From the NCBI RefSeq assembly GCF_009834535.1, contig NC_045717.1:25978001-26042000 (forward strand): 64,000 nt of DNA. The letters are read 5' to 3'. A program made the translations under genes and the position numbers. Each line of letters starts with the position of its first letter. Within the stretch, counting starts at the first letter, position 1. The notes below the pieces were generated by a model. That model was given only the letters and a program-made list of their open reading frames with translations. It was not told the origin of the DNA and did not search any database. The DNA is from Camelus ferus (lineage: Eukaryota). This document shows positions 1,741 through 64,000 of the stretch, piece by piece.

Positions 1741-2046
1741 CTTTGGGATGTTCCACGAAAGTCCTGACACATGAAACACATGCTGTTCTGTAATTTGGTG
1801 CAACAGCTGACACCAGCTCCCTGGGGAGCACTGTGTGCTAGCTGCCATGTATCCACCACCTGCGGACGACCCGGGTTTGTAGAGCCTGAGAGAACATTTA
1901 CCACGCAGACCGTTCAGTGCGGGACTCGTGTTCATCTGTGCCTGTTTGGAAGGGCTTCCCTGTTGCTCCGCCCAGCTCTCAGTCGGGTCCCCCGCCCCCG
2001 GGCCGCCTCCTGTTAGACACTCATCATTTCTTTTTTCTCTTGATAG

Positions 2047-12452: not shown

Positions 12453-12502
<50 letters not shown>
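12453..12502 (+). repeat. (CA)25 microsatellite in SF3A2 intron 1
   Basis: Perfect dinucleotide run counted directly. Confidence 0.97.
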
Positions 12503-12505
<3 letters not shown>

Positions 12506-12829
12506 CGAAACAATTAATTTCTTCACTTTTCCTGTTAGCCTGACTTTTTGTCTGTTGTTAGTTTTTTTTCCTCAAAGCATCATCACCTCACACACTGATC
12601 AGTTGTGTTTTCCCCACAGGTTTAAACAAATGGATGACTTTTCCCATTTCCCCGTAGAAACTCCCTCTCAAAGCTAGCATACCGCTGCTCACGTTGGGAC
12701 TGGAGCCCCACCTTGCATTTGAGTAGCTGTCCTAGAACCTTCTGTCTGTGTTCCCCTCGGCTGCCTTCTGTCTTCAGTCTGACCATCTGCTCCCCTTCCT
12801 CCTTTCCTTCCATCAGAACACGTCAAGTA

Positions 12830-22872: not shown

Positions 22873-25523
22873 ATGCAGGGCCCGCCCCTCTCTCGGCTGG
22901 CCCTGGTGCTGTCGGTGCTGGGGGCTCTGCTGAGGGCCGGGACCCCCAGGGAAGAGACCTCCAGCACCCCAACCTTGCCTGGGGAGCCAACTACAGACAC
23001 TGGGGGGCTCATCTTCCACCAAGACTGGGAATGGCCCCCCCCCAGCATCCGGCCACCAGGCATCCCTGGGGATCCTCTGTGCCTGGTGACCCTGGGTGGG
23101 GGTGGCAATGGGAGCAGTGCTCTCCTGCGGGTGGTGGGGGCCTTGAGTGGCTACGAGCAGGCCTTCCTGGAGGCTGTGCAGCATGCCCGCTGGGGCCCTC
23201 GCGACCTGGCCACCTTCGGGGTCTGCCCCCCCAGCGGTAGGCAGGCTGCCCTGCCCCACCTACAGCAGCTGCAGGCGTGGCTGGGGGAGGCCGGGGGGCG
23301 GCGGCTGGTGGTCCTGCACCTGGAGGAAGGTATGTGGGGGCTATAGCCGGGAGCAGGGATGGGAGGCAGCCACCATTCTCCAGAGACTGGGTTCTGCCAG
23401 AGCCCCCAGCCCAGCCCCCTCCAGGCCTCTTCCAGAAGTTGAGACTGATGGCCAGAAAGGTGGGTGACCTGATGTTTGCCACATCTAGGGGCTGGAAGAC
23501 CTCCCATTCCCAGACCTGCCCCTCCACCCATGAAGGAGCCTCAGGGGTGAGGCCAGCACAGCCTGAAGGCCCAGCAGAGGACGGCCCCTCCCCTCCACAA
23601 AAGACCCCTGGTAGGGGTGTGTGTGGCCTGTCCTCAGGGGCCACTGGCCTCAAACCCACTACCAAGGGCTCAGAGGTGACAGGTGGCAGCCCGATCGCCC
23701 ACCCTGTTTGTCTGACACTCCTCTCAGGCCACCTGTGTCCCAGGGGCATCAGACCAGCTGCTGCTCAGGTGGGGCCTCTCCCGCCTGCAGGACAAGACAG
23801 GCTTGGCGGGAGGGGCTCCAGCTTCCGTGGCTCAGGTGTCCTTCCTCCATTGTTCTGGCCACAGTGATGTGGGAGCTGACGCCCTCGCTGAAGTTCCAGG
23901 AGCCTCCACCTGGAGGAGCCAGTCCCCTGGAGCTGGCCCTGCTGGTGTTGTACCCAGGAACCGGCCCGGAGGTCACCGTCACCGGGACTGGGCTGCCTGG
24001 CACCCAGGTACCAGGGAGTTGAGGGGGCTGTCCCTGGGCCCCAGGAGCCCTCACTCCTGGCAAGGGAGGGCGATGGGGTTTTCTAACTGCTTAACAGAAA
24101 GGCCACCAGGGTCCAGGCTGGAATCCTGAAGGGGTATTAAGAGCAGTAGGCTGAGCAGGGCTGGAACCCAGCAGCCCTGCCTGGCTGAGCTCCCATCTCC
24201 GCAGAGTCTCTGTCCAGCTCCGGACTCCAGTTACCTGGTGCTGGCTGTGGACCGCCCGGAGGTGGCCTGGCGCGGCCCTGGGCTCGCCCTGACCCTGCGG
24301 CGTCGCGGAAACGGTAGGCCCCCCTGACAGGGACCTGTCGGGCAGCTGACCCCTACCCCAAAACCCCAAGCTGCTGAGCCAGCACACACGTGTCACCCCC
24401 CCACCCCGCAGGTGCCCCCCTGAGCACTGCCCAGCTGCAGGCCCTGCTGTTTGGCTCGGATTCCCGCTGCTTCACACGGATGACCCCGGCCCTGTTGCTG
24501 CTGCCCCCACAAGGGCCTGTGCCTCTGTCCGCGCGAGGCCAGCTGGACTCGGTGCCCTTTCCACAGCCCAGGTGCGCGCAGGCGCAGACCTGGAGTGGGG
24601 GAGTGGGGGCAGAGGGACCCTGCACCTTCACGACCTCCTCGTGACCCTCCACTCCACTGTCCAGGGCGTCCCCGGAGCCCGAGGAGCCGCTCCCCAGCGC
24701 CGACCCCTTCCTGGAAACTCTCATGCGCCTGGTGCGCGCGCTGCGGGGTCCCCCGGCCCGAGCCTCGCCCCCGCGTCTGGCCCTGGACCCCGGAGCACTG
24801 GCCGGTTTCCCGCAGGGCCAGGTCAACCTGTCGGACCCCTCGGCGCTGGAGCGCCTGCTGGACGGCGAGGAGCCTCTGCTGCTGCTCCTGCCGCCCACCG
24901 CAGCCACCGCCGGGGGCCCCGCGCCTCTGCAGGATCCTGCCTCCGCGCTCTGGGCTGAGGGCCTCACGCGCCGGGTGACCGCCAAGCTTCAGAGGGCGGC
25001 CGAGGAGCTGCGCGGCCTCCCCGGGCTGCCGCCAGCCGCCACGCCACTGCTGGCACGCCTCCTCGCGCTGTGCCCGGGGGACCCGAGCGGCCCCGGCGGC
25101 CCGCTGCGCGCGCTGCTGCTACTAAAGGCGCTGCAGGGCCTGCGCGCCGAGTGGCACGGGCGGGAGCGGAGCGGCCCTGCCCGGGCGCAGCGCAGTGCGG
25201 GGGCCCCAGCCGCCGACGGGCCGTGTGCGCTGCGCGAGCTGCGCGTGGACCTGCGCGCCGAGCGCTCGGTACTCATCCCTGAGACGTACCAGGCCAACAA
25301 CTGCCAGGGTGCGTGCGGCTGGCCGCAGTCGGACCGCAACCCACGGTACGGCAACCATGTGGTGCTCCTGCTGAAGATGCAGGCCCGCGGCGTGGCCCTG
25401 GCGCGCCCGCCCTGCTGCGTGCCCACGGCCTACGCCGGCAAGCTCCTCATCAGCCTGTCGGAGGAGCGCATCAGTGCACACCATGTGCCAAACATGGTGG
25501 CCACCGAGTGCGGCTGCCGGTGA
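22873..25523 (+). CDS. AMH: Anti-Mullerian hormone precursor, 575 aa, 5 exons
   Basis: join(22873-23329, 23865-24007, 24205-24313, 24412-24571, 24665-25523) = 1728 nt. It has a signal peptide, the RAQR|S convertase site (25182-25193) and a TGF-beta cystine-knot domain ([10 protein letters not shown]...[21 protein letters not shown]...CCVP...ECGCR). Confidence 0.98.
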
Positions 25524-25849: not shown

Positions 25850-28547
25850 TCAGTCCCGCCCCTTGCCTGCGCGGTGCTTCCGGCGGCCCGGAGGCCGGTC
25901 CTCCTCCTCCGGGGAGGCCCAGGCCTGCTTCTTCCTGTACTCTGGGTCTCCGGAGTCTCGCGCCCATGGCTGATGGCCCCCTTTGCGTGCCTCCCAATGC
26001 CGCGGTAGGGCTCTCCGGGGCTCCCCGGCAGCCCGTGGCCTCTCCTCTTTCCGTGGCTTCTCCCTCCGTGGTCTCTCTTCCCTTCTTGGCCTCTCCTCTT
26101 TCTGAGGCCTCTCCTTCCGCAGCCTCTCCTTCTTCGGCCCCTCCTTCAACCTCTCCTTGGGCCCTCGGTCTGCAAGGGGCGCGGGCTCCTCCCCAGCGGC
26201 CTCCTCAGACTCCCCTTTGTCCTTCCCTGCAGCCTCCCTGCTCCCGGGGACCTTGGCCCTTTCCTCTACCTTCATCTGGGGTGCAGGCGGTCCCAGTGGG
26301 GGAGCCCAGGTCACGGGCTTTGGCTGCAATGCGGACAGTGTGGGGTGGTGGGGTCAGAGCAGAATGCCACGGGGGCCCAGGCCCCTTCCCCCAATGAGAG
26401 CCCCACTGACGGGTCACTTGAAGGACGTGCTTACCAGGGCCGATGCAGGACCCTTCGGGGCTGAGCTTGGCGGGACGCACGGTTCAAGGACAGGCACAGG
26501 GGCTTCCGCTTCCCCAGCCACGGCCTCTGGGAAGGGCCAGGAGGGGATGTGAGTCAGCCTGAGCCGGAGAGCCGACCACACGGTCCATCCCAGCCCTTTC
26601 CCCTAGAGCCCCCTCTTCCTGGGGACAGGCAAGGGGGCTCAGCCAAGCCAGACTCCACCAGGTACCCTGAGGCTGGACTGAATCCGTCCGAGCCCTGGGA
26701 AGGGGCTCCGGGTCTCCACTACGGCGGAGGCCTTTCCTTCAAAGCTCCCTCATTCAGGTAGCAAAAGGATGCTCCCCGTTTCTCCGAGGGCGGTAGGAGC
26801 GCCACGGCGCAAGGAAAGCGGCACACTACCGAGTGGGGGTGCACACAGCCCATCCTGGGCGTGCAAGGCCGGTGGGGGCGGGGCTGAGGGCCTCTTCTCA
26901 GGGAGGAAGGTGCACCAAGGCCCCTACTGGGACGGGAAGGGCTCCGCGGAAGGTCCGTGTTGGGGACGCGCGCGAGGCTCAAAGCCGGTCCTGAATAGTG
27001 GGTCTCAGACGCCACCCTGGGGGCGCATAAGGCCGGAGCAGGAAGTGCAGGGGGCGGGTCCCAAGGTCCATACTAGGGGGCAGGGGGCGCGCACTGCCTG
27101 GGGTGGGGGTCCAAGACCCAACTCTGAAGGGGAGGCGCACAGACCGGCCCCCCGGAAGAAGCCACGCGTGGGGCACAGCTCACCGCGGCACAGCTGGAAG
27201 GCGGAGCCCAGCAGCGCCACGAGCGAGGCGAGCACCAGGCACTTGTTGAGCGACAGCTCTCCCCAGGGCAGCTCCTCGCTCAGGGCCGGGGGCGGCGGCG
27301 GCGGCTGCGGGGGCGGCACGGCCTGCGTCTTCTTCCGCGCGGGGCTCCGGGGGGCTGCGGGAGCGGGTGCGGGATGGGCGCGGGCTGCCAGGGGCGGAGC
27401 CCCGGCTGCGCTCGGCCCCGCCCTGCCCGGCTGTGCGGCCATGCGCGGAGGAGCTAAGCTCTGCCGGCTTGGCACCTCCGCTGGGATACCGAAAATATTC
27501 TAGAAGATAACTCGCTGAAGCTTAGTAGCACCTGAGCTGATGTTAGCATGAATTACAGAGGCTCACAGCCCGTTTCGTTACGTCACTCCACCAGGAGCCC
27601 CGTGCACGGTACTGACTCCCCATCTAAGGACCCGGCCCAGGATCGACCCCCAACCCAATACTGGTCCAAGCCCACCCCCCGCCTCACCCCTGTCTCCGGC
27701 AAACCCACTTGCTCCTGTTTTCAGCCTCTCCTTCCCGTGTCCTGAGGCCACTTTGGCCACCGGCTCCTTTTCTGTCATCTTGGGCCTGGCATCCACACCG
27801 CCTGCGGGGCTGCCCTCAGCTACCGGCTCCTGAGAATCCTATGCAGAGCGACATGTCATCCTGGCAGTTTCCTTCCAGTCTTTCCTCCGAGGGAGACCAA
27901 ACCCTTCCCATGGGCTGCAGACATCCACCGTCAGTGCCAGCACATCCTGTCCTCCAGGGGCACCCTGGGCTGAACCCCAAGGGCCCAGGCTACTCACCTG
28001 AGGCCAGCTGTTGGAGTCGGCCAGACTGGGTGTCACTGTTGGTGGGAAAAGAGGGAGAGTGAAGGTCATGGGAACCCCCAGGCTGACCCCACCCTGCCCC
28101 GGGTTCTGCTGGGTGAGGGCTGGGTAACTGCTCCCGTTTTACAGATTTGAAAGTAGACAGACTGAGACTTGCACACAGGTGCACGGCACTTCACTGACAA
28201 GCTGGGATTCTAAACCTGACCTCTGCGGCCCGGCACCTGTGTTCTTTGGGCTCCTTATGAACCCCCAAGGCTTTAATGGGCACCCCCAAGACTTTAATGG
28301 GCACGGAGTGTGGAAATGGAGAGCACGGTTTAAGCCAGTCTAAGGTGGGAGTCCAAGGCCTGGTCTCTGAAGGTGAGCCACCTGGCTCAACAGAAAGTGG
28401 GCTGCACTCTGTGGCGCCCTCTGGGGTACCTGGAGCCCTGTCCTCCCGCGGCTGGCCTGGGCAGGGGTCAGCCAGTGCAGAGAGGCCCTCGTCCACTTGG
28501 CAGCTGCCCAGGCCTCCATCCAGCTCCTCCAGGGCCCTGGTTGTCAT
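25850..28547 (-). CDS. JSRP1: Junctional sarcoplasmic reticulum protein 1 (JP-45), 340 aa, 6 coding exons
   Basis: complement(join(25850-26323, 26435-26526, 27184-27354, 27709-27838, 27998-28035, 28430-28547)) = 1023 nt. All introns are GT-AG. The protein has MTTRALEELDGGLGSCQ..., the hydrophobic segment LSLNKCLVLASLVALLGSAFQLCR and an E/K/R-rich tail ending RAGKGRD. Confidence 0.95.
28135..28225. mobile_element. MIR fragment in a JSRP1 intron
   Basis: CCCGTTTTACAGAT...GACTTGC...GCTGGGATTCTAAACC. Confidence 0.55.
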
Positions 28548-28964
28548 GGAGACGTCTGAGAAACAGCAGGTCCAGAGTCAGGCTGGAGGGAACGGGGAAG
28601 AGGCGGCCTACATTTGCTGAGCTCCTGCTATGGGCCTGGGCCTGACCTGGGGAGAGGGGGCTCCGACCTGCCCCTCCCAACAGGCCTTGCTTGGCCCCCT
28701 TCCTGGAGCCCCATTCACTTGGTAAATTCATACTCATGCAAGGCAAGGCCAGCAGCCTCTGCCAGGCACTCTCCCTGACCCCCCCCAGGACCCCTCCTGA
28801 TAGGCCAGCCTCCTTGGGGCCCCAGCATCCCTGAGCATTCAGGATGGGGAGGCTGCTGGGGCCCCAGGGAGGGCTGGGTCCTGCTCGTGGTCACAGAGAT
28901 GAGCAAGGAGCCCAAACCAGAACCCTTGGCCCCAGGGTCGGCTCATGTTCTCTGAGACCAGGGA

Positions 28965-28974
28965 CTATTTTTAT
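28965..28974. promoter_or_regulatory. MEF2-like/TATA-like element upstream of JSRP1
   Basis: CTATTTTTAT has one mismatch to YTAWWWWTAR, lies in a GC-rich context and is about 420 nt upstream of the JSRP1 ATG. JSRP1 is a skeletal-muscle gene. Confidence 0.45.
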
Positions 28975-29239
28975 CTGGTGCCTGAGGCCAGCAGGACAGG
29001 CCAACATGGGGCCCAGCCCCTCCCAGGCCTTTGCCCCCCCTGGGGTCTCCCTCTGGACCATCCTCACCAGCCATTCCCGGCACCCACACTCCCCCTGGAC
29101 CCCCTAAGTCTAGGAGCTCAAGCCCCAGCAGCCAGGATCAGCCTCACTCTGGCCGTGACAGGCAGGGACAGGGGCAGGGGATCCCAGACCTCCCGATCCC
29201 AAAGCTGGGGTCCCCGCCCCTCTGACTGTCTCTGCTTCC

Positions 29240-29310
29240 ACCTCACAGATGAAGAAACTGAGGCTAGAGCTGGAGCCAGAGGTTGTGCAGAGCTTGAGTC
29301 AAACCTGTCT
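29240..29310. mobile_element. MIR fragment
   Basis: CACAGATGAAGAAACTGAGGCTAGAG core. Confidence 0.6.
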
Positions 29311-30019
29311 GTTGGCCCCCACAGCCTTGCTTTTCTGGGTCACCAGTGCCTCTAGCTCCAGTGTCAGTGTGACCCATCCCTGGGCAGAAAGAGGACCCTT
29401 CCCTGGGGCCAGAGCAGGCCATGGGGGAGGGGCCCAATGGGCAGGGGGGCAATGCCCCTAGGTGTGTTTGGGGGCATCCACCGGAGCTGGGGATCCCCGT
29501 GGACCTCAGGGATGCCCTCCCAGACCCCAGGGACCCCCTCTGTCCAGGCCGCCCCCTGCCTATCTTACCTCACTGCTGCGGTGTTGGGCCTGGTGCACAG
29601 GATGGATCATGAGGAGGGTGGCCCCATGACAGACAGCAACAGGTGGCCAGAGGCCACAGGGTGGGCCAATCAGCTCACTGGTTGCAGTGGGAGGGGGAGG
29701 AGGCCTCGCTGGAGATCCCAGCTGGGCACACCCCCGACTTGGAGCAGGACCAGGCATTGGGCCCGGGGGCGGCCCCACCCCCACCAGCGTGGCGCCACCT
29801 CCAGGCTGGCCACAGTGACCCTGGGAGCATTGCTTCCTGTCTCTCAGCCTCAGAAAAGAGGGTCTCGGGGGTGAAAACTCCCACAGAACGTGGTCAGCTT
29901 GCCTTTGGTCTTGGGTCTGGTCAGCCATCCTTAGCTAAACAACCATGCCCCTGCGGAGCCCAGGGCCGTCAGGAGGGGCTTCCCGGAGGAGGACGACACC
30001 GCTGAGGGGAAGCCAGGCT

Positions 30020-30100
30020 CTGCTGGCTCAGCTTCCTCATCTGGAAAGTGGGGTCATTTCCTCCCAGGGGGGCAGTAAGGTCAGAAGGAGTTAATCCGGG
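30020..30100. mobile_element. MIR fragment
   Basis: CTCAGCTTCCTCATCTGGAAAGTGGGG core. Confidence 0.6.
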
Positions 30101-30233
30101 TTAAACAACCACTTGATAAGTATGGACTGCTTTTGTGTCATCCCATCTAGTCACGCGTTCACGCCTTTGTTTAGTCAGTCATCAAACACACACCACCAAC
30201 ACAGCCCAGCTGTATGGGAAATAAGTTTGTCAC

Positions 30234-30318
30234 TTTTTTCTTTAATGGAGGTACTGGGGACTGAACCCAAGACCTTGTGTATGCTAAGCACACGCTCTAA
30301 CACTGAGCTATACCCACC
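30234..30318 (-). mobile_element. tRNA-derived SINE (vic-1-like), short tail
   Basis: ATGGAGGTACTGGGGACTGAACCCAAGACCTTGTGTATGCTAAGCACACGCTCTAACACTGAGCTATACCC. Confidence 0.9.
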
Positions 30319-30329
30319 TGCCTGTCATT

Positions 30330-31575
30330 TTTTTAAATGAGGTTTTTGAGATACAGTTTATGTACCATATAATACAGTCTGTAAAGTGTACAATTCAGGA
30401 GTATTTAGTACATTCTCACAGTTGTGCCACCAGCACCTCTAATTCCAGAACATCCCAAAAAGAAGCCCTGTCCCCGTTGATAATCACCCTCCCATCCCCC
30501 TCCCCAGCCCCTGACAGCCAGGAGCCCCCTCCCTGTGTCTGGGGACTGGCCTGTTCTGGACGTCTCACATCCATGGACTCACACACTGCGTGTCCTTCTG
30601 TGTCTGCTTCTCTCACTGAGCGTCGTGTTCTCAGGGTCCGTCCACGTGGTAGCAAGTGTCAGGGCTTCTCTCCTTTTCACGGCCGAGCAATGCTCCCCTG
30701 TGTGGAGGGACACATTTGTGTGTGTCCATTCACCAGCCTCTCACACGGCTGGGATTGGGGGAGGAGAGGAGGTGAATTGGTCAAGTGCAGGTACAGAGCC
30801 TGTCTTCAAGTAACATGTTGATATTTTATTCATTGTAGACTTTTATGCATTAATTTTTAATGTGGTAAAATATACATAAACATAAAACTTACCAAAGGAA
30901 AAAAAAAACATAAAATTCACCATCTTAACCGTTTGTGAGAGCACAGCTCAGCGGCGTTAAGCACACTCACACTGTTGTGCCGCCATCCCCACCACCGTCT
31001 CCAGAGCTTCCTCATCTTCCCAAACTGAAACTCTGTCCCCGTGAAACACTGACTCCCCAGCCCCTCCCCCAGCCCCAGCCCCACCGTCTGCTCTCTGTCT
31101 CTGTGGATGTGACTCCTCCAGGGACCTCCTGTGAGTGGGCTCAGTCAGTGCGTGTCCTTCTGCGCTGGGTTCTCCCGCTGAGCTCCACGTCCTCAAGGTC
31201 CATCCACGCTGCAGCAGGTGCCGGAACCGCCTTCTTTCTGAGGCTGAGTGGTGCTTCATTACAGGGATGCTCCACACTCTGCTTGCGTATTCACCCGTCT
31301 ATGGACACTTGGGGTGTTTCCACCTTAAGCTGCTGTGAGTCATGCCGCTGTGGACACAGGTGTGCAAACGTCTCTTCCTGTCCTTGCTTTTGATTCTCCT
31401 GGGTCCGTACCAGGAGCGGGACTGGGTCCCACTGGGTCATATGGGGAGTTTACGCTTAACTGTTTGAGGAGTGCTCCACCACGGCTGCGTCATTTTCATC
31501 CCCACCTGCTGTGCACGACGGTTCTGATTTGTTCACATCCTTGCCCACTCTTGTTGTTGTCTGGGTTTTTTTTTA
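30330..31575 (-). mobile_element. Two adjacent L1MB-type 3'-end fragments (~30330-30760 and ~30830-31575)
   Basis: TTTTGAGATACAGTTT...AAAGTGTACAATTCAG...CTGTTCTGGAC and GTGGTAAAATATACATAAACATAAAA...CCATCTTAACC...GATGGACAC. Confidence 0.75.
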
Positions 31576-31595
31576 AATAATATATTCTATTTTGA

Positions 31596-31747
31596 GGGGG
31601 AGGGCATACCTCAGTGGTAGAGCGTGTTCTTAGCAGGCACGAGGTCCTGGGTTCAGCGCCCAGTACTTCCATTAAATAAATAAATAAACCTAATTACTTC
31701 CTCTCCCCACCCCCCAAAAAAAGCCAAATAAAAAATTAAATAATATC
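31596..31747 (+). mobile_element. tRNA-derived SINE (vic-1-like) with 12-bp target-site duplication
   Basis: GGGGGAGGGCATACCTCAGTGGTAGAGCG...GAGGTCCTGGGTTCAGCGCCCAGTACTTCC followed by an (AAAT)n tail. ATATTCTATTTT flanks it at 31582-31593 and 31748-31759. Confidence 0.92.
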
Positions 31748-32344
31748 ATATTCTATTTTAAGTAAGGTTTCAAATTCAGTTTCTCTGTCCCCCGGCCACA
31801 TTTCAAGTGGCTGCCACACTGGAAGGGGCAGGTGGAGAGCAGGGTTCAGAGACCCCACGGGGTGGCACTGCCCTAGACGGCCAGGCTGGAACGAATGCAC
31901 CACTCATCTAAATGCCCATCCATCCATCACAGACTTGTATCACATGCCAAATCCTGCACTGAGGGTCTGGGATGAAGGAGGAAGGAGACTTTGTGCCGCC
32001 CTGTTGGCGCTTGGCAAGGGGGACAAACCCTGCCCCCCCAATGCCTCTTTGCAGGACCCAGAGCCCCTTCCCTGCTGCCCTCCCAGATCCCACCTCTTGC
32101 CCCCCCCTTCCCTGACACACAGAGTGGCCTCAGACCTGCCAGGATGCTCAGCACCTCCCGCCTTTGCTTTCCTTTCCCTTCTGCCCAGAACAGCCCTCAC
32201 CCTTGTGTCATGATACCACAATGGTGGTAAGCGGGAAACGTGGAGACAACTTATTTTTGCACCCAGAGGTTAAGTAAGAAAATGTCAGTAAAGCAGTGAA
32301 ACCGGAAAACCAGACAGCCTCACAAACCATTGCAGAAAACCATC

Positions 32345-32794
32345 TGTATGGGGCTGAATTGCTGCTGCAATGAATTCACACGAACGTAGTGGTTTAAAAC
32401 AGTACGTAATACCCTCGCACAGTTCTGAAGGCACAAGTCTGACCTGGGCTCAATCCAGGCATGGGCAAGGCTAGTCCCTCCGGAGGCTCCAGGGAAGAAT
32501 CAGGTCCCGCCTTCTCCAGCTTCTAGAGGCCCCACATCCCTGGCTTGCGGCCCCTCCCTCCATCCTCACCGCCAGCAGCGCGGCATCTCCCGTTTCTCTC
32601 TGACTGACCTCCCACCTCTCTCTGATGAGGACCCTGTGATGACACGGGACCTCCTGGGAATCCAGGGTCACCCTCATCCCAGCGCCTTAACTTAATCCCA
32701 CCTGCAAAGTCCCCTCTCCCCTGTGAGGTGACACATCCACAGGTCCCAGGACCAGGATGTGGGCATATTTGAGGGCTGTTATCCCGGCGACCAC
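32345..32794 (-). mobile_element. MaLR solo LTR (MLT1A-like)
   Basis: GTGGTTTAAAACAG...CACAGTTCTG...CTCCAGCTTCTAGAGG...CCTGCAAAGTCCC...ACCACA. Confidence 0.85.
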
Positions 32795-33164
32795 AGCATC
32801 CGAGACGTATAGATAAGTGAAGGCAAACAAGACAAGAGTGTGGATCCCATTTATATGAAAATGCAGTTACCCATAAATAGAACAGGGAGAGACTAAACTG
32901 TGGTAATGCAAAGAGAATGGTCTGGAAGAAGACATCCCCTAATTGTTAACAGTGGCTTCCTCCAGGTAGGGGATATGGGGCCTGGGGTTGAGGAGTTTTG
33001 GAGAAGGCCATGAGATTCGAAAGCCAGAATGTATGCAGTGTCCCAGCAAGTCTGAAACCAACAGATGCAACAGACACTAAAATCTAAGAGCAAACTACAA
33101 GGAGAAGCCAGATGTTAAACACTTCCAAACTATCTCCCCTGAGGTATTAATTACAAAGGGATAT

Positions 33165-36100
33165 TTTGGGTTTTCCAGATACCTTTATGTTAACGATTTC
33201 TAATTTAATTCCACTGTGGTCAGGAAACATCTTCTGTATGATTTCAATCTTTTTATTTCATGACCTAGTATATTATCTCTCCATCTTGATGAATATTCCA
33301 CGTGCACTTGAAGAGAATGTACATACCGCTGTTTTGGGGCAGAGTGCTCTGTAAACACCAGGTCGGCTGATAGTGTTGTTCGAGTCTTCCATATCCTTAC
33401 TGATTTTCTACTTATTCTACTAATTATTGAGAAAGGGGTGTTGAAATCTCTAACCATCATTGTGGATTTGACTCTCTTGTCTTTTCAGTTTTATCAAATT
33501 TTGCTTTGTGTATTTTGAACCTCGTTGTTAGGGGCCTATGTGTTTAGGATTACGATGTCCTCTGGATGAACTGACTCCTCCAACATTGTGTAATGCCCTT
33601 CTTTGTCCGTAGTAATATTTCTTGTTTTGAATTCTGTTCTTTCCTGATAGAAACATAGCCAGTCCAGCTTGCTTATGATTAGTGTTTGGATGGTGTATCT
33701 TTTTCCACCTTTTCCCCACTTATAGCACTTCCCCCTCAGCTTTATTGCAGCATACTTTCATGCCATTAAATTCACTTCTTGTTAGGTTATGGTTTGATGA
33801 GCTTTGGCAATTTTTTTAATGGTTGTGTAACTACACCACGAACACACTACAGAACATTTCCACCACCCCAAAGTTCTTATCTCCCTCTGCAGTCAACACT
33901 CCCCTCACTCCTGCCTCTAGGCCACCATTGTTACGTTTTCTATCAGTGTTGTTTTCCTTTTCGTAAAATTTTGTAGAGTGGAATCATACACCATGTAGAG
34001 TTTTGAGTCTGGCCTCTTTCCCTTTGTATGAAGCTTTTGAGATTCGTCCAAGTTGTTAGGTGTACCAGTAGTTCCACTCTTTTTGTTGTTGAGTATTATT
34101 CCACTGGATGGATATAACACAGTTTTTGTGTTGTTTTTTGAATCCATTCACCTGTTGATAGATATTTGAATTGTTTCCAGTTTGAGGTTTTTGTAAATAA
34201 AGGTGATATGATCATTTGCATACAAGTCTGTTTGGAAATAAGTTTTCTTTCTCTTCGGTAAATACTCCAAAGTAGAATGGCCAAATCACATGGAAAATGT
34301 ATTTTTAACTTTGTAACAAATTGCCAAACTGTTTTCCAAAGTTATTGTCCCATTTTGCATTTATTCCAGCCATGCATCAAAGTTCCAATTGCTCTCATCT
34401 TCACCAATTCTTGGTGTTAACAGACTTTTTCATTTAATCTCTCTGATACATATACTGTGGTATCCCACTGGGGAGCATTTCCTTAATAACTAATTATGTT
34501 AAGTATCTCTTCATGTGCTTGTTGGTCATTCAGGATCTTCTCTGGGGAAGTGTCTGCTGATCCAGTCTGTCACCCACTTAAAATACTGGGAATAGATTTC
34601 ACTCTAGGGCTAGCTTAGCCCTACAATGAGGCATGAGTCTTCTGAGGTTTCTGCAGAACGCCCCACATACTCAATGAATTCTCTCCACCTTTGCTAGTAG
34701 GTTCTCCAAGCAGTCCCACGTTGTGTGAGTGCTCAGTGATTGTCCCTTCCCCCAGCATCGTTCTTTATCTGGCCGCTTATGCATGCACTGTCTGACATTC
34801 ATCCAAAGACTCAAGAGGAACCCTATGAAAACTTGAGTGCTTTCTCAGAATAGGTCCCTGCTCTCCAGAACTCTGCCCTCCAAATTCTAGCTACCTTGTC
34901 TCCCCTCATCTCCCAGTCTCGCAGTCTTCCGTCTCTGTTCCCTCAATCCACAAACCCTCTGTGTTCTGCTTAGGTTTCCCCTCCCTGACCTGCAGCCTGG
35001 GTATCACCTACAGGCAGAATTCTGGGGCAGCTGTAGGGCTCATCTTGTTTGTGTCCCTTCTCTCTGCACTGTATGCTTTCTGAAAACCATTGTTTCATAT
35101 GTTTTGTCCAGCTGTTAAAAGTAGGGGGGCAATTGCCATAGAGTTACCTACCTACTGCATTCTCTTAAACAGCTGGTCAGGAATCCACTGCGTGGATATG
35201 CCAGAATTTATTTCTGCAGTTTCCAGTTCACTCTGGTATGGTGTGTAACCTATGATGAGTTACTTTGTCCATCACCATAGGTTAATCTTGCCTGCAATTG
35301 AACATCACGTTATAGAATCATGCTGTGTACACTCTTGTGTTTGGCTTATTATGGTCAACATTGTGTCTGTGTAATTCATGCATTTGGTTCTGTGTCTTAG
35401 TATTTTGTTCTAATGCTGCACGGTATTCTGTGTTTTGGGTAGACCACTAATTACATATGCATTTTTTGTTGATGGACATGTCAGTCGTTTTGAGTTTTTG
35501 GCTCATACAAAGACAGCTACTGTGAACATTCTTGTCCAAGTCTTCGGTGGATGAATTTATGCATTTTTGTTGAGGACAGTGATGGAGTTGCTGGGTCAGA
35601 GGGTATACATATATTAACTTTAAAAGATACGGTCAGACAGGCTTCCAATGTAGCTGTGTGGTTTTACGTTCCCACCTGAAGGGTAAAAGAGGAGAGCTCC
35701 ATATCTTTGTAATACTTGATACCATCAATCTTTCTAATTTTAGCCATTCTTTTGGGGTTACAGAAATATCTCAGTGTGTTTTTCTGAGGGGGTAACTAGG
35801 TTTATTTATCATTGTATTATTTAGTTATTTTTATTTTGTCAGGGAGGGAGGTAATTAGATTTATTTATTTTTAGAGGAGGTGCTGGGGATTGAACCCAGG
35901 ACCTTGTGCATGCTGAGCACACACTCTACCACCGAGCTATACCCTCCCTGCTCAGTGTGGTTTAAGCTTACATTTCCCTGATGACTGAGGTAGAGCATCT
36001 TTTACTATACTTATTGGCCATTTGAGTGTCTTCTTTGGTGAAGTGTGTATTCACAATCTTTTGCCACATTTTAACTGGGTTGTCTTTTTCTTTGTAATTT

Positions 36101-36215
36101 GTAGGAATTTTTGTTTGGTTCTGTTTTATTTACTGTTTAACTATATTGTGGCTATAAGTCCTTTGTCAGATATATGTCTTGCTAATATCTTATCCTAGTT
36201 TGTGGCTTGATTCTT
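33165..36215 (-). mobile_element. Nested old L1M fragments (ORF2 endonuclease region ~33165-33720, 3'-end pieces, 5'-UTR-like piece ~34560-35140)
   Basis: ATTTCTAATTTAATTCCACTGTGGTCAG...GAAGAATGT...TTGAAATCTCTAACCATCATTGTGG and TTCTGGATA/TCCTTTGTCAGATATATG are L1 antisense motifs. The region is AT-rich. Confidence 0.75.
35786..35949 (-). mobile_element. tRNA-derived SINE (vic-1-like) inserted in L1
   Basis: GAGGAGGTGCTGGGGATTGAACCCAGGACCTTGTGCATGCTGAGCACACACTCTACCACCGAGCTATACCCTCCC. It is flanked by CTCAGTGTG at 35770-35778 and 35951-35959. Confidence 0.9.
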
Positions 36216-36274
36216 CACTCTCTTAAAGGTGGATCCGGGAAGGCAGGAACCAAGCGTATCTCATTCACTTGCCA

Positions 36275-36325
36275 GGCCTGGCACATAGTAGGCTCTCAAT
36301 AAATATTCGTTGAATGAATGACTGG
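36275..36325 (+). mobile_element. L2 3' terminus
   Basis: GCCTGGCACATAGTAGGCTCTCAATAAATATTCGTTGAATGAATGA is the canonical L2 end. Confidence 0.8.
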
Positions 36326-36469
36326 GCTCAGTTACCCCACGTGGGCATGTTAATCCCCGTGCTGCTCATCTCACAGGATTTTGTGCAACATGCCAGAGAC
36401 ACAGGATGGATTTGCTGCAGAGTCGGATTTGGCGGTGCTCAGACACCCTCAGCTTTTGGAATCAGAAAG

Positions 36470-36703
36470 GGTGGAGCTAATAAACAACAAGGCCCTACGT
36501 TAGAGCACAGAGAACTATATTAATATCCTGCGATAACCTATAATGAAAAGGAATATGTATGTGTAACTGAATCACTATGCTGTACACCAGAAACTAACAC
36601 AACATTGTAACATTTACTTCATGTACTTTCATTACAACATTTACTTTAATTAAAAATAATAAAGAAAGAAAAAGAAAAAAAAAGAAAAGAAAAGAAAAGA
36701 AAG
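36470..36703 (+). mobile_element. LINE-1 3' end (artiodactyl-type) with (AAAAG)n tail
   Basis: ATAAACAACAAGGCCCTAC...AGCACAGAGAACTATAT...GTAACTGAATCACTATGCTGTACACCAGAAACTAACACAACATTGTAA followed by an A-rich tail. Confidence 0.88.
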
Positions 36704-36704
36704 G

Positions 36705-37800
36705 GGCGGAGCTGGGTTCTTCCACCAGGAATCTTGCCTTGGAAGCTCCACGTGGGCGCCCCGCCCATAGCAGGGCCCTCCCATAGATAGGCCCGCCCAC
36801 ACCTGTCACTTAGCAGGGCAGGGAGGGTGCCTCCTAGCAGGCGTGGTTACAGGCCGGAACCAGGAAGTGGGTGGAGTTCCAAAGGCCACTGACCAATGAG
36901 GTGAAAGAGGATTGTGCCAGGAGGGGGCGCGGCCTAGTGGGCACTGAGGCCGTTGTCTGCGTTTCCATTGGGCGGTCTGGCGTCGTCAGGGAAACGCGGG
37001 GTCCCGGTGGAGGGGCGGGGTTTCCCGGGAGGCGGGGCTTCCGGGGGCGGGCGGGCCGGCCGGGGCTCCTGCCGTCAGCTGACTGGCCGCCATCTTGTCC
37101 GCCATTTGCAAGCGGCGCGGCGCGGAGCCGGAGAGAAGGGGAACGCGGCCTGCCGAGCGGTCCCCGCCGCCGCCGCCGCCGCCGCCGCTGCCCTGCTGAC
37201 CGCCGCCGACCTGGCCTGGGAGCCCGCCCCGCCGCGGCGGCCGGCAGCGCAGCGCTTTCTCGGGCGGAAGGCGCGGCCACCGGGCCCCCTCAGGGCTCCC
37301 GGCCGCGGGCCTCCCGGGGCTCGAGCCGGGCGGCAGCCGCCGCGATGGCCCTCAAGATGGTCAAGGGCAGCATCGACCGCATGTTTGACAAGAATCTGCA
37401 GGATCTGGTGCGCGGTATCCGCAACCACAAGGAGGACGAGGTGAGCTCGGCGCGCCGACCGCGGCCCGGACGCCCACCCTGACCGCGACTCGGTTCCCGA
37501 TCCCCTCTCTGCCCCTGACTCTGGCCCCCAGCCCGTCCCCGAGGCTCCGCTCCAGACTCGAGCCCCGCCTGCCCGCGGCCTGGGCTTCCGCACGCCCGCG
37601 CCCTCCCCGAGGCTCGGTTTATCCCCGAGGCCCGAAGGCACCCGAGCCGCGGGTTTTGGACCCACGTATGTATCGGAGCGCCTGGGGAGCCTGCCGCTGA
37701 GTGGGCTGCCTCCCCGAACCTCGGTTTACCCGCTCGGCGATGGGGGCTCGCCGCCTTCTCCCCGCGGATGGCCTCGGACGACTTGGCAGGCCCCCCCACC
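36705..37800 (+). promoter_or_regulatory. AP3D1 CpG-island promoter and 5'UTR
   Basis: ETS CCGGAACCAGGAAGT ~36854, CCAAT ~36893 and inverted CCAAT ~36967, GC boxes ~37012, tandem YY1 motifs GCCGCCATCTTG/CCGCCATTT ~37086-37108. CpG-dense. Confidence 0.85.
37164..37187 (+). repeat. (CCG)8 repeat in the AP3D1 5'UTR
   Basis: Counted directly. Confidence 0.9.
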
Positions 37801-40800
37801 CCGGAGCGGCGGCTCTCCAATATTGAGTGTGTTGCTGGATGTATAAGGGGCCACGCCCCAGGCCCTGGGCACCTGGTTGGGGGGACCCTCCTCTCCGCGG
37901 GCCGCCCCCGGACGGAACCCCTTATGGGTTAAACCCACGTTCAGGTCACTCCCTGATGCCTGGCCCGGAACTGGGTCTTGCCTCCTGAGCCCGTGTCCCC
38001 CGGAAGGTGCGGCCACCCCTCTTATTGGGAGGAGGGCAGCAGACATCCTAGGCCAAAATAAGGAAGCTACTCAGGGGTCCTGGAATAGGGAAGCCAACTT
38101 CAACTAGAAACTCGAAGCCGGGGAGGAAAGGTTTTCCAGAAGTAATAATGCAATCGTGGGCACCATTTTTCTCCCTCCCCCACCCCCCCAACGTGTGACC
38201 TAGATTTAGGGGGAATGGGGACAGTTAGTGGCCACCAGGCTGCCAGCTTCCAGGGAAGGATGCCCATGGCTGCACAAGTCCCCTTTCTCTGCTGGAGTCC
38301 TCTCTTTGGTGGAGAGCAGCTGTTTGATGTGGTGCAGGTCCCACTGCCAGATGTCACCCGGCCCTCTTCACAAGGGCGCCCCCGGGGGTCCAGCATCACT
38401 GGGTGGAGGTGCAGAGAAGTTCAGGAATTTGCTGGGAGGCACCGAGAGCCCCTGGCTCTGCCCTTGTGCCGGGAACCTGAGTTCTTGCTTCTTTGTTGCA
38501 CTTTTTCAGAATGGGTGTGACCTCGCTGAAATGTAATTAGGTTATTTTAGTTCATTTCCATCCCCTGTTGTCTTCTGGCAACACCTGGGTTTTGCATTGT
38601 GTTGGAAGCTCTGGCCAGCTGCGTTGGCTATAGCTCACACTTACCCTGGCCTTTAGTTTCTTTGTGAGTTGGAAGAGTATGTGGTTGGCCTGCATTTTGG
38701 TTACTGAGTGTGGCTAAGTGAGTTTGGGTGATGTTTGCACCCTTAGATTTTTTTCTGCCCTGGTTGACCTCCTGATGTCCCCTCTGTCAGCGGATGTTCT
38801 GAGCAGACTGTTGTGGGTATTTTGAGGAGGGGCCAAGGGGTCTTTTCAGGCGAGAATCGCACACTCAGGTGGGGCATCTGTTTTTTCAGGAACATTGGCC
38901 CATTCTCCCTGGCAGTGCCCTGAGCCGAGCTTTATTCATGTGGAATTACTGGGAATTTTTATTTTTATTTAAATATTTTGGGGGAGGAGGTAATTAGGTT
39001 TATTTAGTTATTATTTTTAGTGGTTGAACCCAGGACCTTGTGCATACTGAGCACTCACTCTCCTGCTGAGCTGTACCCTCCTCCCCCTGGAATTGGTGGG
39101 AACTGGTGGCGTCATCGCCCCCAGGCTGGGAGCCCATTGAGGGGGCTTTGGGTGGTGGAGGTGGGGGATGCTGCAAGTCCTCAAGGCCAGGTTTCCACGT
39201 GAGTCCTGCCCTTGGCCTGTTGATGATGGCCGCAGGAGGTGCCTCTGGGTGCCGGCTGGCGTGGTTTCCTCAATAGAAGAGTTGTGCCATGGAGAATCCT
39301 TGCTGGGGTGTCCCTTCTGGTTGCAGATGCTCGGCCATGGCTATTGAGTTTCTCTTCTGGCTCCCTTCTCTCTGAGATCCCCCCCACCCCCGCCGAGCCC
39401 CAGGAAAGGCTACTGGCAGCAGTATAGTTTTCCCCCAAAGTTTACTTTTTGTAGTGGATTTTAGCTTGAAACTTCTATGTGGCACCGAAGAGATGAGGCT
39501 TAATTATGACTTTAAAAGCCCAGTGGAAAGGCAGGGTGATTTAGTGTATGATGTTTGGGAGAGCCAAGTCCAAGTTCTTGGGCCTGTTTGGGTGACCTGG
39601 GGAGAGCCCCCAATGGAAAGTGCAGGCAGCAGCCACCAGCCTCCCCACCTTGCTGAGGGCTTTATGAGAGTGCAAGAGTGACTGCTGTAGGCTTCTGTGG
39701 GTGCCCCAAAGAAGAAACTAGAAAACCCAGGACTGCAGGCAGAATAACTTGTTTTTTGAAACTCTTGTTTCAGTTTATGATACCAGGTGTGTGCGTGTGT
39801 ATGAGTTGGGTTACCATGGAGAACAGACTTTAACAGTGGTCTAATTCACGTGTTTTTCTTGGTGCTTGAGTTTTTTTAATCCTTAAGATGGGGCAGGAAT
39901 CGTGTTGGCAGGTAGAGGAAATTCACTTGCTAATGTCCTTGCTTCTAAAACTTGCGTATGACTAGGAAAAAGACCAAACAGTTTTAACATTTCCTTTTTT
40001 TTTTATTTTTGGGGACGGTAATTAGGTTTGTTTGTTTTTTAATGGTGGTTCTGGGGATTGAACCCACGACCTCATTCATGCATGCTAAACACCCGCTCTA
40101 CCACTGAGCTACACCTGCCCCCTTAACATTCTGTTCTTATGAGTACCTTTGGAATTTTGGGGAAAGCCTTTTCTTTCCGTCTTTTTAAGTTGTAGAATTA
40201 TACCCATCACTTTTTGTGATAAGCCTAGTGTTTATTAAAGAAAAAGGGAAAATACTTCTCCTGGTGAATCAGTTCGAGAACTTTTTCCTCGTGCAGAACT
40301 CGAGGGAGAGGCTGGGGTTCTGCCCCGCGTCCTGCCTGGGGGCGCAGCAGCGCCGCCGCCGCCCGCGCGCACGGGGCGCAGGGCTGCCAGCCCTCCCGAG
40401 TGGGCGCGCAGGCGCCGCGGTTTATTTTACTCCGCCCATGGCAGTGAGGTGGCTTCCAGTGTGTACTGACTGGTGCCCTCCCCTCAGGCGTGGCTCTGCT
40501 GGGTCCGGCAGTACCGGGGTATGTCTGAGAGTTTTCCCTTGGGTCTCAAAATTTCCAACCCTATTTAACTGAAGTTTCTGAACTGTAAAAACAAATTCAG
40601 TTTAAATTGTGTACTGTCAGCTGTGTGTCCCTGTGGGTTCTGCATTCACCAACTGTGGAATGAAAATATTTCTGAAAAAAATTCCAGAAAATTCCAAAAA
40701 GCAAAACTTGAATTCGCTGCATGCAGGCCGCTGTTTACATAGCACTTGCGTTGTATCGGGATGGTCAGTGATCTGGAGGTGATATAAAGTGTAGGGGTGG

Positions 40801-63956: not shown

Positions 63957-64000
63957 GTAAGCACAGGGCTGAGCCGGAGCCTGCATTCTGTCCTGTTTAC

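What the first reader, a model, noticed from the sequence alone, without database searches (positions are those of the whole stretch)
28547..37345. Gene order differs from human and mouse: AP3D1 is head-to-head with JSRP1, implying an inversion of the DOT1L-JSRP1 block
This window shows DOT1L(+)-PLEKHJ1(-)-SF3A2(+)-AMH(+)-JSRP1(-)-AP3D1(+). In human 19p13.3 and mouse chr10 the order is AP3D1(-)-DOT1L(+)-PLEKHJ1-SF3A2-AMH-JSRP1(-)-OAZ1(+), so AP3D1 faces DOT1L and JSRP1 faces OAZ1. Flipping the five-gene block reproduces what is seen here and predicts OAZ1 next to the DOT1L 5' end. One breakpoint must lie between the JSRP1 and AP3D1 promoters, which changes the regulatory neighbourhood of AMH and JSRP1. 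Which state is ancestral and how widely it is shared (camelid, artiodactyl or laurasiatherian) cannot be told from this window, and the arrangement may already be visible in genome browsers.
Basis: partly seen in the sequence, partly recalled or inferred. Interest (0 to 1): 0.7.

Follow-up and report, generated by a model that had tools for sequence, protein, structure and literature searches.

The report
Artiodactyl-wide inversion around the AMH gene
The camel gene order is real: a block of five genes (DOT1L to JSRP1, about 90 kb) is flipped compared with human, a bat and chicken, and the same flip is present in pig, musk deer and a whale, so it is an old, fixed and probably harmless rearrangement, not an assembly error.

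Summary
The window is 100% identical to Camelus ferus CM020789.1 where the two overlap. It carries DOT1L 3' end (+), PLEKHJ1 (-), SF3A2 (+), AMH (+), JSRP1 (-, ATG 28547) and AP3D1 (+, ATG 37346).

JSRP1 lies head-to-head 7-9 kb upstream of AP3D1 in four independent assemblies: pig, camel, musk deer and right whale. Misassembly is therefore excluded.

In the bat Myotis brandtii, JSRP1 faces an antizyme gene (OAZ1), as in human. Published gene lists give the human-like order for human and chicken and the flipped order for pig and sheep. The flip is therefore derived and at least artiodactyl-wide, cetaceans included.

The junction lies at window 30,617-31,028. Bat homology on the JSRP1 side ends at 30,616. 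Zebra homology on the AP3D1 side starts at 30,901, at the 3' end of an old L1.

One point is unresolved. A hyena scaffold shows the same JSRP1-side/L1 junction for 146 bp before an assembly N. Either carnivores share the inversion, or a short L1 piece was already there and the inversion arose by L1-L1 recombination.

The second junction is outside the window.

I found no paper describing this inversion. Interest is modest.

The parts
1883..4582 (+). DOT1L, last coding exons (3' end of the gene; left part of the inverted block)
   Evidence: ORFs match the DOT1L C-terminus as I recall it. No tool confirmed this. The position, convergent with PLEKHJ1, agrees with the published gene lists.
9312..11111 (-). 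PLEKHJ1 coding region
   Evidence: MRYNEKEL start at 11088-11111. Exon ORFs. Weak PH-domain hit, E 0.0034. Myotis has a PH-domain gene at the collinear place.
16637..22093 (+). SF3A2 coding region
   Evidence: Pfam PF16835. ATG. Proline-rich last exon ends at 22090.
22873..25523 (+). AMH coding region, 780 bp after the SF3A2 stop
   Evidence: AMH_N and TGF_beta domains. Exon 1 ORF with its ATG at 22873.
25850..28547 (-). JSRP1 coding region (right end of the inverted block)
   Evidence: PF15312 E 5.5e-17. Exon ORFs and ATG.
28548..30232 (.). JSRP1 upstream DNA that moved with the block
   Evidence: Collinear with the Myotis JSRP1-OAZ1 spacer (L010 to 24260) and with hyena L012.
30233..30342 (.). 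Camel-lineage tRNA-derived SINE insertion
   Evidence: It interrupts the Myotis alignment. Further copies at 31599-31701, 35802-35948 and 39024-39084.
30343..30775 (-). Old L1 3' fragment 'A', on the JSRP1 side
   Evidence: Orthologous to Myotis L010:24289-24563 and hyena L012:22904-23140. L1-like ORF2 C-terminal remnants. Its right end is approximate.
30617..31028 (.). Inversion junction interval. The JSRP1-side homology tract (hyena) and the AP3D1-side tract (zebra) overlap at 30896-31028.
   Evidence: Myotis homology ends at 30616. Zebra homology starts at 30901. Hyena homology runs to 31028.
30896..34590 (-). Old L1 'B' and nested repeats, with its 3' terminus at the junction; ancestral AP3D1 upstream DNA
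   Evidence: A 3.9-kb collinear alignment with the zebra AP3D1 upstream (L007:1070-4929). Also collinear with Rhinolophus and badger. ORF2 remnants.
34591..37345 (.). Remaining AP3D1 upstream DNA and CpG-island promoter
   Evidence: Collinear with zebra, badger, mole and Rhinolophus. CpG observed/expected 0.6-1.0 from 36.5 kb.
37346..64000 (+). AP3D1, exon 1 onward (the gene runs past the window end)
   Evidence: In L004 the coding range is 34 kb long.

Best explanation
This is a real evolutionary inversion of about 90 kb. It flipped the block DOT1L-PLEKHJ1-SF3A2-AMH-JSRP1 in place, between AP3D1 and OAZ1.

The ancestral order, seen in human, a vespertilionid bat and chicken, is AP3D1(-) DOT1L(+) ... 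JSRP1(-) OAZ1(+). In the camel and in all four main artiodactyl lineages sampled (camels, pigs, ruminants, whales), JSRP1 faces AP3D1 instead. The event was therefore fixed no later than the artiodactyl common ancestor.

Both breaks fell in intergenic DNA between divergent promoters. In this window the junction lies about 2.1-2.5 kb upstream of the JSRP1 ATG and about 6.4 kb upstream of the AP3D1 ATG, at the 3' end of an old L1 element. No gene is interrupted, and the SF3A2-AMH regulatory unit lies inside the block and is untouched.

Shown here:
- gene identities
- the shared JSRP1-AP3D1 adjacency
- the bat JSRP1-OAZ1 adjacency
- the position of the junction

Inferred:
- the second junction (OAZ1 next to the DOT1L 5' end)
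- neutrality
- the exact branch on which the inversion arose
- the breakage mechanism
For: 1. Gene identities.

2. The window is 100% identical over 11,156 bp to Camelus ferus GCA_009834535.1.

3. AP3D1 look-ups with 10-kb flanks show JSRP1 (PF15312 or its first coding exon) on the opposite strand 7-9 kb upstream of the AP3D1 ATG. This holds in pig chr2, camel, musk deer and right whale. IZUMO4 lies downstream in every species. All four are collinear with the window across the whole interval.

4. Myotis brandtii reads PLEKHJ1(-) SF3A2(+) AMH(+) JSRP1(-), then an ODC-antizyme gene (+) 5.7 kb further on. There is no N between JSRP1 and the antizyme gene.

5. Myotis is collinear with window 5,808-30,616 and with nothing beyond. 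The zebra AP3D1 upstream region is collinear with 30,901-37,345. Zebra DNA beyond that point has no match in the window.

6. Published lists:
- pig: LINGO3, PEAK3, DOT1L, AMH, JSRP1, AP3D1, IZUMO4 (PMC9375371)
- sheep: similar order (PMC8085236)
- human: AP3D1, DOT1L, PLEKHJ1, SF3A2, AMH, JSRP1, OAZ1, LINGO3 (PMC5110597)
- chicken: OAZ1 at 1.93 Mb, AMH at about 1.95 Mb, DOT1L at 2.01 Mb (PMC5703906)
- a statement that gene order around AMH is conserved across tetrapods (PMC12117775)
Against: - The second junction was not seen.
- DOT1L identity rests on my memory of the protein and on position.
- The outgroup evidence for the AP3D1 side is indirect. In zebra, badger, mole and Rhinolophus nothing is called within 10 kb upstream of AP3D1, so DOT1L was never seen next to AP3D1 with these tools.
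- A hyena scaffold carries the same JSRP1-side/L1-terminus junction as camel and whale. The event may therefore predate artiodactyls, or the junction may not be a simple break.
- The human and mouse order comes from one roughly positional published list and from my own knowledge.
Confidence: 0.87

Rival explanations
1. The inversion arose by ectopic recombination between two old L1 3' ends lying in opposite orientation. One was a short piece on the JSRP1-OAZ1 side, still visible in hyena. The other is the long L1 upstream of AP3D1, still visible in zebra. Under this reading carnivores are not inverted and the event is artiodactyl-specific. This refines the mechanism of the main explanation; it does not deny it.
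For: - The two outgroup homology tracts overlap by about 130 bp inside the L1 terminus. Hyena matches the camel through the spacer up to 31,028. Zebra matches from 30,901 onward. A plain break and rejoin would give tracts that abut.
- Zebra's left flank of the L1 is unrelated to the spacer and holds an ancient repeat, so it is old DNA and not a young insertion.
- Hyena DNA after the 146-bp L1 piece matches no AP3D1 upstream sequence from nine species, apart from one weak 229-bp hit.
- Hyena is equidistant (77-79%) from zebra, camel and whale, whereas zebra-camel and zebra-whale are 82%.
Against: - The hyena piece ends 3 bp before an assembly N, so its true length and its neighbour are unknown.
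- Myotis shows no such L1 piece after fragment A.
- 78% identity between the hyena piece and the zebra L1 is as high as true orthologues elsewhere in these loci, while other L1 paralogues score 63-74%.
- A few shared characters group hyena with zebra against artiodactyls.
- The reciprocal chimeric L1 at the other junction could not be examined.
Confidence: 0.4
2. The inversion is older than artiodactyls and is shared with carnivores. That would mean fixation in a common ancestor, or sorting of an ancestral polymorphism during the rapid radiation of hoofed mammals, carnivores and bats. The hyena junction would then be the true inversion junction.
For: - Hyena L012:22904-23492 aligns as one block with camel 30,417-31,028 and whale L006:4615-5204, across fragment A, the spacer and the first 146 bp of the AP3D1-side L1.
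- That 146 bp is 77-79% identical to the zebra, camel and whale copies, which is in the range of orthologues.
- The 10-kb flanks of badger and zebra would not reach JSRP1 even if it were there at 11-13 kb.
Against: - Zebra's flank beyond the L1 terminus is not JSRP1-side DNA.
- Badger has no JSRP1-proximal sequence within 10 kb of AP3D1. It also shares a unique upstream segment with mole.
- Hyena DNA after the N does not continue as the L1 body that camel, zebra, badger and Rhinolophus all retain.
- With zebra not inverted, this reading needs incomplete lineage sorting or a reversal.
Confidence: 0.25
3. The camel arrangement is an assembly error, such as a contig flipped or misjoined in the repeat-rich 30-37 kb stretch.
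For: The interval is rich in SINE and L1 copies, and only one camel assembly was seen.
Against: - There is no N in the window.
- The same adjacency, collinear at nucleotide level, is present in four independently assembled genomes from four lineages and in published pig and sheep gene lists.
Confidence: 0.02
4. The camel or artiodactyl order is ancestral, and human, mouse and bat carry the derived state.
For: With only Myotis and human as directly contrasting mammals, polarity depends on outgroups.
Against: - Chicken has AMH between OAZ1 and DOT1L.
- A 2025 synteny study states that order and orientation around AMH are conserved across birds, reptiles, amphibians and mammals.
- This reading would need the same inversion at least twice, in bats and in Euarchontoglires.
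Confidence: 0.03

Closest known systems
Human 19p13.3 / mouse chr10 / chicken chr28 AMH neighbourhood (AP3D1-DOT1L-PLEKHJ1-SF3A2-AMH-JSRP1-OAZ1)
   Same: The same genes are present. Order and relative orientation inside the five-gene block are the same, including SF3A2 ending 780 bp before AMH and AMH convergent with JSRP1. IZUMO4 is still downstream of AP3D1.
   Different: The block as a whole is reversed. JSRP1, not DOT1L, faces AP3D1. By inference, DOT1L, not JSRP1, faces OAZ1.
Lineage-specific submicroscopic inversions used as rare genomic changes in mammalian phylogeny (general knowledge; I did not check any specific paper on mammalian cases here)
   Same: It has two intergenic breakpoints and is tens of kb long. 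It is fixed in a whole clade, invisible to cytogenetics, and disrupts no gene.
   Different: I found no paper listing this one. Its exact clade is not yet settled because of the hyena junction.
Inversions mediated by recombination between inverted L1 or other retroelement copies (known from human-chimpanzee comparisons; from my own knowledge, not checked here)
   Same: An L1 3' terminus sits exactly at the junction. The outgroup homology tracts overlap within it. The two candidate L1 copies would have been in inverted orientation before the event.
   Different: The second, reciprocal L1 junction was not seen. The pre-existing JSRP1-side copy is supported by a single short-read hyena scaffold that breaks at that point.

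Membership tests
Fixed two-breakpoint evolutionary inversion | The same genes keep their internal order and relative orientation, but the block is reversed relative to both flanks | tested here: inconclusive
   Internal order is conserved against Myotis. Reversal relative to the AP3D1 flank is shown. The other flank is outside the window and is supported only by the pig and sheep lists and an unchecked note.
Fixed two-breakpoint evolutionary inversion | Reproducible in independent assemblies (not an artefact) | tested here: met
   Pig GCF_000003025.6, camel GCA_009834535.1, musk deer GCA_022376915.1 and right whale GCA_028564815.2 all show JSRP1(-)/AP3D1(+).
Fixed two-breakpoint evolutionary inversion | Outgroups carry the alternative arrangement, which gives polarity | tested here: met
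   Myotis has JSRP1(-)/OAZ1(+). The human list, chicken positions and the tetrapod-wide conservation statement agree.
Fixed two-breakpoint evolutionary inversion | Breakpoint localised by the end of outgroup homology on each side | tested here: met
   The JSRP1 side ends at 30,616 (Myotis). The AP3D1 side starts at 30,901 (zebra).
Repeat-mediated (L1-L1) recombination inversion | Homologous repeats in inverted orientation at both breakpoints in the uninverted state | tested here: inconclusive
   Zebra has the L1 upstream of AP3D1. Hyena has a 146-bp piece of the same L1 type on the JSRP1 side, but it ends at an assembly N, and hyena's own gene order beyond that point is unknown.
Repeat-mediated (L1-L1) recombination inversion | The flank switch occurs inside the repeat, so the homology tracts overlap | tested here: inconclusive
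   The tracts overlap at 30,896-31,028. The same overlap would appear if hyena simply carries the inversion.
Repeat-mediated (L1-L1) recombination inversion | A reciprocal chimeric repeat at the second junction | not testable with these tools
   The OAZ1-DOT1L spacer of an artiodactyl could not be fetched.

The most novel reading that the evidence does not exclude
The junction records an inversion made by recombination between two inverted L1 3' ends. Alternatively, the same junction in hyena means the inversion is shared by artiodactyls and carnivores but not by horses or bats. It would then be a structural marker sorted incompletely during the rapid radiation of these orders. Either reading would turn an ordinary synteny difference into a dated, mechanism-resolved rare genomic change.
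Probability: 0.3. Interest if true: 0.5.

Novelty: new member of a known kind. Interest (0 to 1): 0.3.

Why it matters
- It settles that the unusual camel gene order is biological and old, so annotation and liftover pipelines should expect it in every artiodactyl and whale.
- It provides a clean structural character for Artiodactyla including Cetacea, with a junction narrowed to about 400 bp that can be scored by PCR or by alignment.
- It changes the long-range neighbourhood of JSRP1, AP3D1, DOT1L and OAZ1. The AMH-SF3A2 regulatory unit stays intact, which argues against any effect on AMH.
- If the hyena junction is real, the event also bears on the disputed branching order of carnivores, horses, artiodactyls and bats.

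Tried and rejected
- **Relics of DOT1L exon 1 or OAZ1 in the intergenic interval.** None were found. The motifs were recalled from memory.

- **Tight AP3D1-DOT1L bidirectional promoter.** I first assumed one. The outgroup flanks show no DOT1L within 10 kb of the AP3D1 ATG, so the break had a wide target.

- **Confirming DOT1L with tools.** Pfam gave nothing. The ESM Atlas search gave only low-scoring disordered-protein look-alikes.

- **AP3D1 look-ups that did not help.** Zebra, badger, mole, Rhinolophus and wombat showed no upstream neighbour, and the wombat gene was too long to return DNA. A pig isoform look-up returned only transcript contigs.

- **Target-site duplication of the junction L1.** I tried to use it to decide which flank is original. 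The L1 5' end abuts another L1, so the test is not feasible.

- **Hyena DNA after the N.** I compared it with Myotis, zebra, badger, camel and Rhinolophus at high sensitivity. Only repeats and one weak 229-bp badger hit appeared. An apparent inverted match to zebra's flank turned out to be the core of a common ancient repeat.

- **Upstream copies of an AP3D1 intron-1 segment in zebra and badger.** These are suggestive of a shared uninverted flank, but zebra and badger flanks do not align to each other.

- **Literature.** No paper describes the inversion. A buffalo and goat AMH paper looked only at SF3A2-AMH-JSRP1.

- **Earlier scan notes.** There was nothing near the finding.

Full report
**What is in the window.** The 64-kb window has no N and is GC-rich. 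Over the 11,156 bp that overlap a fetched locus it is 100.0% identical to Camelus ferus GCA_009834535.1, chromosome record CM020789.1. From left to right it holds six genes.
- DOT1L (+): the last coding exons, about 1883-4582. I recognised these only from my recollection of the DOT1L C-terminus in the ORFs. Pfam and the Atlas gave nothing.
- PLEKHJ1 (-): start codon ending at 11111, exon ORFs, and a weak PH-domain hit.
- SF3A2 (+): ATG 16637, SF3A2 domain E 2.8e-19, proline-rich last exon ending at 22090.
- AMH (+): ATG 22873, AMH_N E 5.7e-51 and TGF_beta, stop 25521-25523.
- JSRP1 (-): ATG 28547, JSRP domain E 5.5e-17.
- AP3D1 (+): exon 1 ATG at 37346 in a CpG island, later exons matching solved AP-3 delta chains at E 1.5e-91.

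**Is it an assembly artefact?** I obtained AP3D1 proteins of many mammals and looked up where they are encoded, with 10-kb flanks. Gene ranges in these look-ups are coding ranges: the AP3D1 ATG sits at locus position 10001.

In four assemblies the next gene upstream of AP3D1 is JSRP1 on the opposite strand, with its first coding exon 7-9 kb from the AP3D1 ATG. These are pig (Sscrofa11.1 chr2), Bactrian camel, musk deer and North Atlantic right whale. IZUMO4 follows AP3D1 in all of them. All four align collinearly with the window across the whole JSRP1-AP3D1 interval.

Published gene lists agree. Pig SSC2 reads LINGO3, PEAK3, DOT1L, AMH, JSRP1, AP3D1, IZUMO4, MOB3A (PMC9375371). Sheep OAR5 reads similarly, though that list is partly interleaved with unrelated genes (PMC8085236). 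A misassembly is excluded.

**What do other mammals have?** A Myotis brandtii gene model that fuses SF3A2 and AMH gave a locus reaching further downstream. It reads PLEKHJ1(-), SF3A2(+), AMH(+), JSRP1(-), then an ornithine-decarboxylase-antizyme gene (+) starting 5.7 kb beyond JSRP1. There is no gap in between. That is the human arrangement.

Other evidence points the same way.
- A human CNV list reads AP3D1, DOT1L, PLEKHJ1, SF3A2, AMH, JSRP1, OAZ1, LINGO3 (PMC5110597).
- Chicken SNP positions put AMH between OAZ1 and DOT1L (PMC5703906).
- A 2025 study states that order and orientation around AMH are conserved across tetrapods (PMC12117775).

The camel state is therefore derived. It is shared by Tylopoda, Suina, Ruminantia and Cetacea, and it is not a general laurasiatherian feature.

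In zebra, badger, mole, horseshoe bat and wombat nothing is called within 10 kb upstream of AP3D1. No JSRP1 or DOT1L exon was found there. This fits a gap of 12 kb or more between AP3D1 and DOT1L, which is what I recall for human and mouse. It is not positive evidence.

**Where is the junction?**
- Myotis is collinear with window 5,808-30,616, interrupted only by a camel-lineage SINE at 30,233-30,342. The 3.7 kb of bat DNA leading on to OAZ1 has no counterpart in the window.
- The zebra AP3D1 upstream region is collinear with window 30,901-37,345, including one 3.9-kb alignment. Horseshoe bat and badger are collinear with parts of 32.4-37.3 kb. Zebra DNA beyond that point (L007:1-1056) matches nothing here except an ancient repeat.

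The junction therefore lies in 30,617-30,900.

The local structure, from left to right, is:
1. JSRP1 upstream DNA.
2. An old L1 3' fragment 'A' (30,343 to about 30,775).
3. About 120 bp of spacer.
4. The 3' terminus of a second old L1 'B', whose body and nested repeats run to about 34.6 kb.

JSRP1 keeps about 2.1 kb and AP3D1 about 6.4 kb of ancestral upstream sequence. The short SF3A2-AMH spacer is internal to the block. I therefore expect little functional consequence; this is inference.

**The unresolved point.** A spotted hyena locus, fetched through SF3A2, is collinear with the window through JSRP1, fragment A and the spacer. It then continues into the first 146 bp of L1 B (L012:22904-23492 against window 30,417-31,028). 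The spacer-to-L1 boundary is the same as in camel and whale. A single N follows, and after it the sequence is unrelated.

That 146-bp piece is 77-79% identical to the zebra, camel and whale copies. Other L1 paralogues in these loci score 63-74%. Two readings remain.
- (a) **Pre-existing L1 piece.** A short L1 piece of the same type already lay on the JSRP1-OAZ1 side, in opposite orientation to L1 B, and the inversion arose by recombination between the two. This explains the following:
  - why the hyena and zebra homology tracts overlap inside the L1;
  - why zebra's other flank is old, unrelated DNA;
  - why the hyena sequence does not continue into the L1 body that camel, zebra, badger and Rhinolophus keep.
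- (b) **Hyena is inverted.** The hyena scaffold simply breaks inside the repeat. With zebra apparently uninverted, this needs incomplete lineage sorting.

I put (a) at about 0.4 and (b) at about 0.25. The remainder goes to a plain break that happens to lie next to an L1, or to assembly problems in hyena. My attempts to separate the two readings were inconclusive. They covered shared substitutions, the target-site duplication, badger-mole and badger-zebra flank comparisons, and a sensitive search of the hyena DNA after the N.

**The second junction.** It lies outside the window and no tool could fetch it. The pig and sheep lists put PEAK3, the far-side neighbour of OAZ1 in human, beside DOT1L. 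An earlier first-stage note of this scan reports an antizyme gene 66,903 bases before this window's start on the same sequence.

**Comparison and novelty.** This is a lineage-specific submicroscopic inversion, a well-known kind of event. I found no paper that describes this one. A buffalo and goat AMH paper examined only the SF3A2-AMH-JSRP1 triplet, which is unchanged. The arrangement is visible in any annotated artiodactyl genome, so it is new only in the sense of not having been written up.

**Verdict.** The inversion is derived, at least artiodactyl-wide including whales, and its junction is narrowed to about 400 bp at an L1 end. Interest is modest at 0.3. It would rise if the L1-recombination mechanism or sharing with carnivores were shown.

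Noticed in passing
window 28548-29422; L003:2480-3690: The Camelus ferus JSRP1 gene model (382 aa) starts its coding region near window 29,422, well upstream of the conserved ATG at 28,547. The pig model (428 aa) is extended in the same way, while musk deer (342 aa) and whale (333 aa) use the conserved start. This is either an annotation artefact or an alternative 5' exon.
   Followed up: no
L010:10001-19581; protein P0362 (Cervus hanglu): Gene models in Myotis brandtii and a deer fuse SF3A2 with AMH (one product carries SF3A2, AMH_N and TGF_beta hits). This reflects the very short spacer, 780 bp in the camel. It is an annotation artefact that happened to be useful here.
   Followed up: partly
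L007:632-824 and L008:1430-1928 versus window 41253-41883: Zebra and badger each carry, 8-9 kb upstream of AP3D1, a copy of part of an adjacent pair of segments that sit together in AP3D1 intron 1 of all species. Each copy is 81-82% identical to its own species' intron copy. This could be an old local duplication or a low-copy repeat. The upstream copy is absent from the artiodactyl JSRP1-AP3D1 spacer.
   Followed up: partly
window 31300-35200: This stretch of the AP3D1 upstream region (old L1 and nested repeats) aligns with zebra, and in part with horseshoe bat and badger. It does not align with pig, musk deer or whale, which have shorter or replaced sequence there.
   Followed up: no
window 21500-21990: The SF3A2 last exon holds a long run of imperfect seven-residue proline-rich repeats (GVHPPAP-like). 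The repeat number differs between species' gene models, which range from 339 to 477 aa.
   Followed up: no
window 12455-12557: A (GT)n microsatellite of about 80-100 bp lies in the first SF3A2 intron.
   Followed up: no
window 36480-36621 versus L006:3721-3881 and L005:4746-4912: A 140-bp element just upstream of the AP3D1 promoter matches, in reverse orientation, sequence just beyond the JSRP1 upstream block in whale and musk deer. It is probably a shared interspersed repeat, sitting near both ends of the spacer.
   Followed up: no
about 66.9 kb before the window start (same sequence): An earlier scan note reports an antizyme gene there with a possible frameshift-independent start. Its position fits OAZ1 lying beside the DOT1L 5' end.
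   Followed up: no
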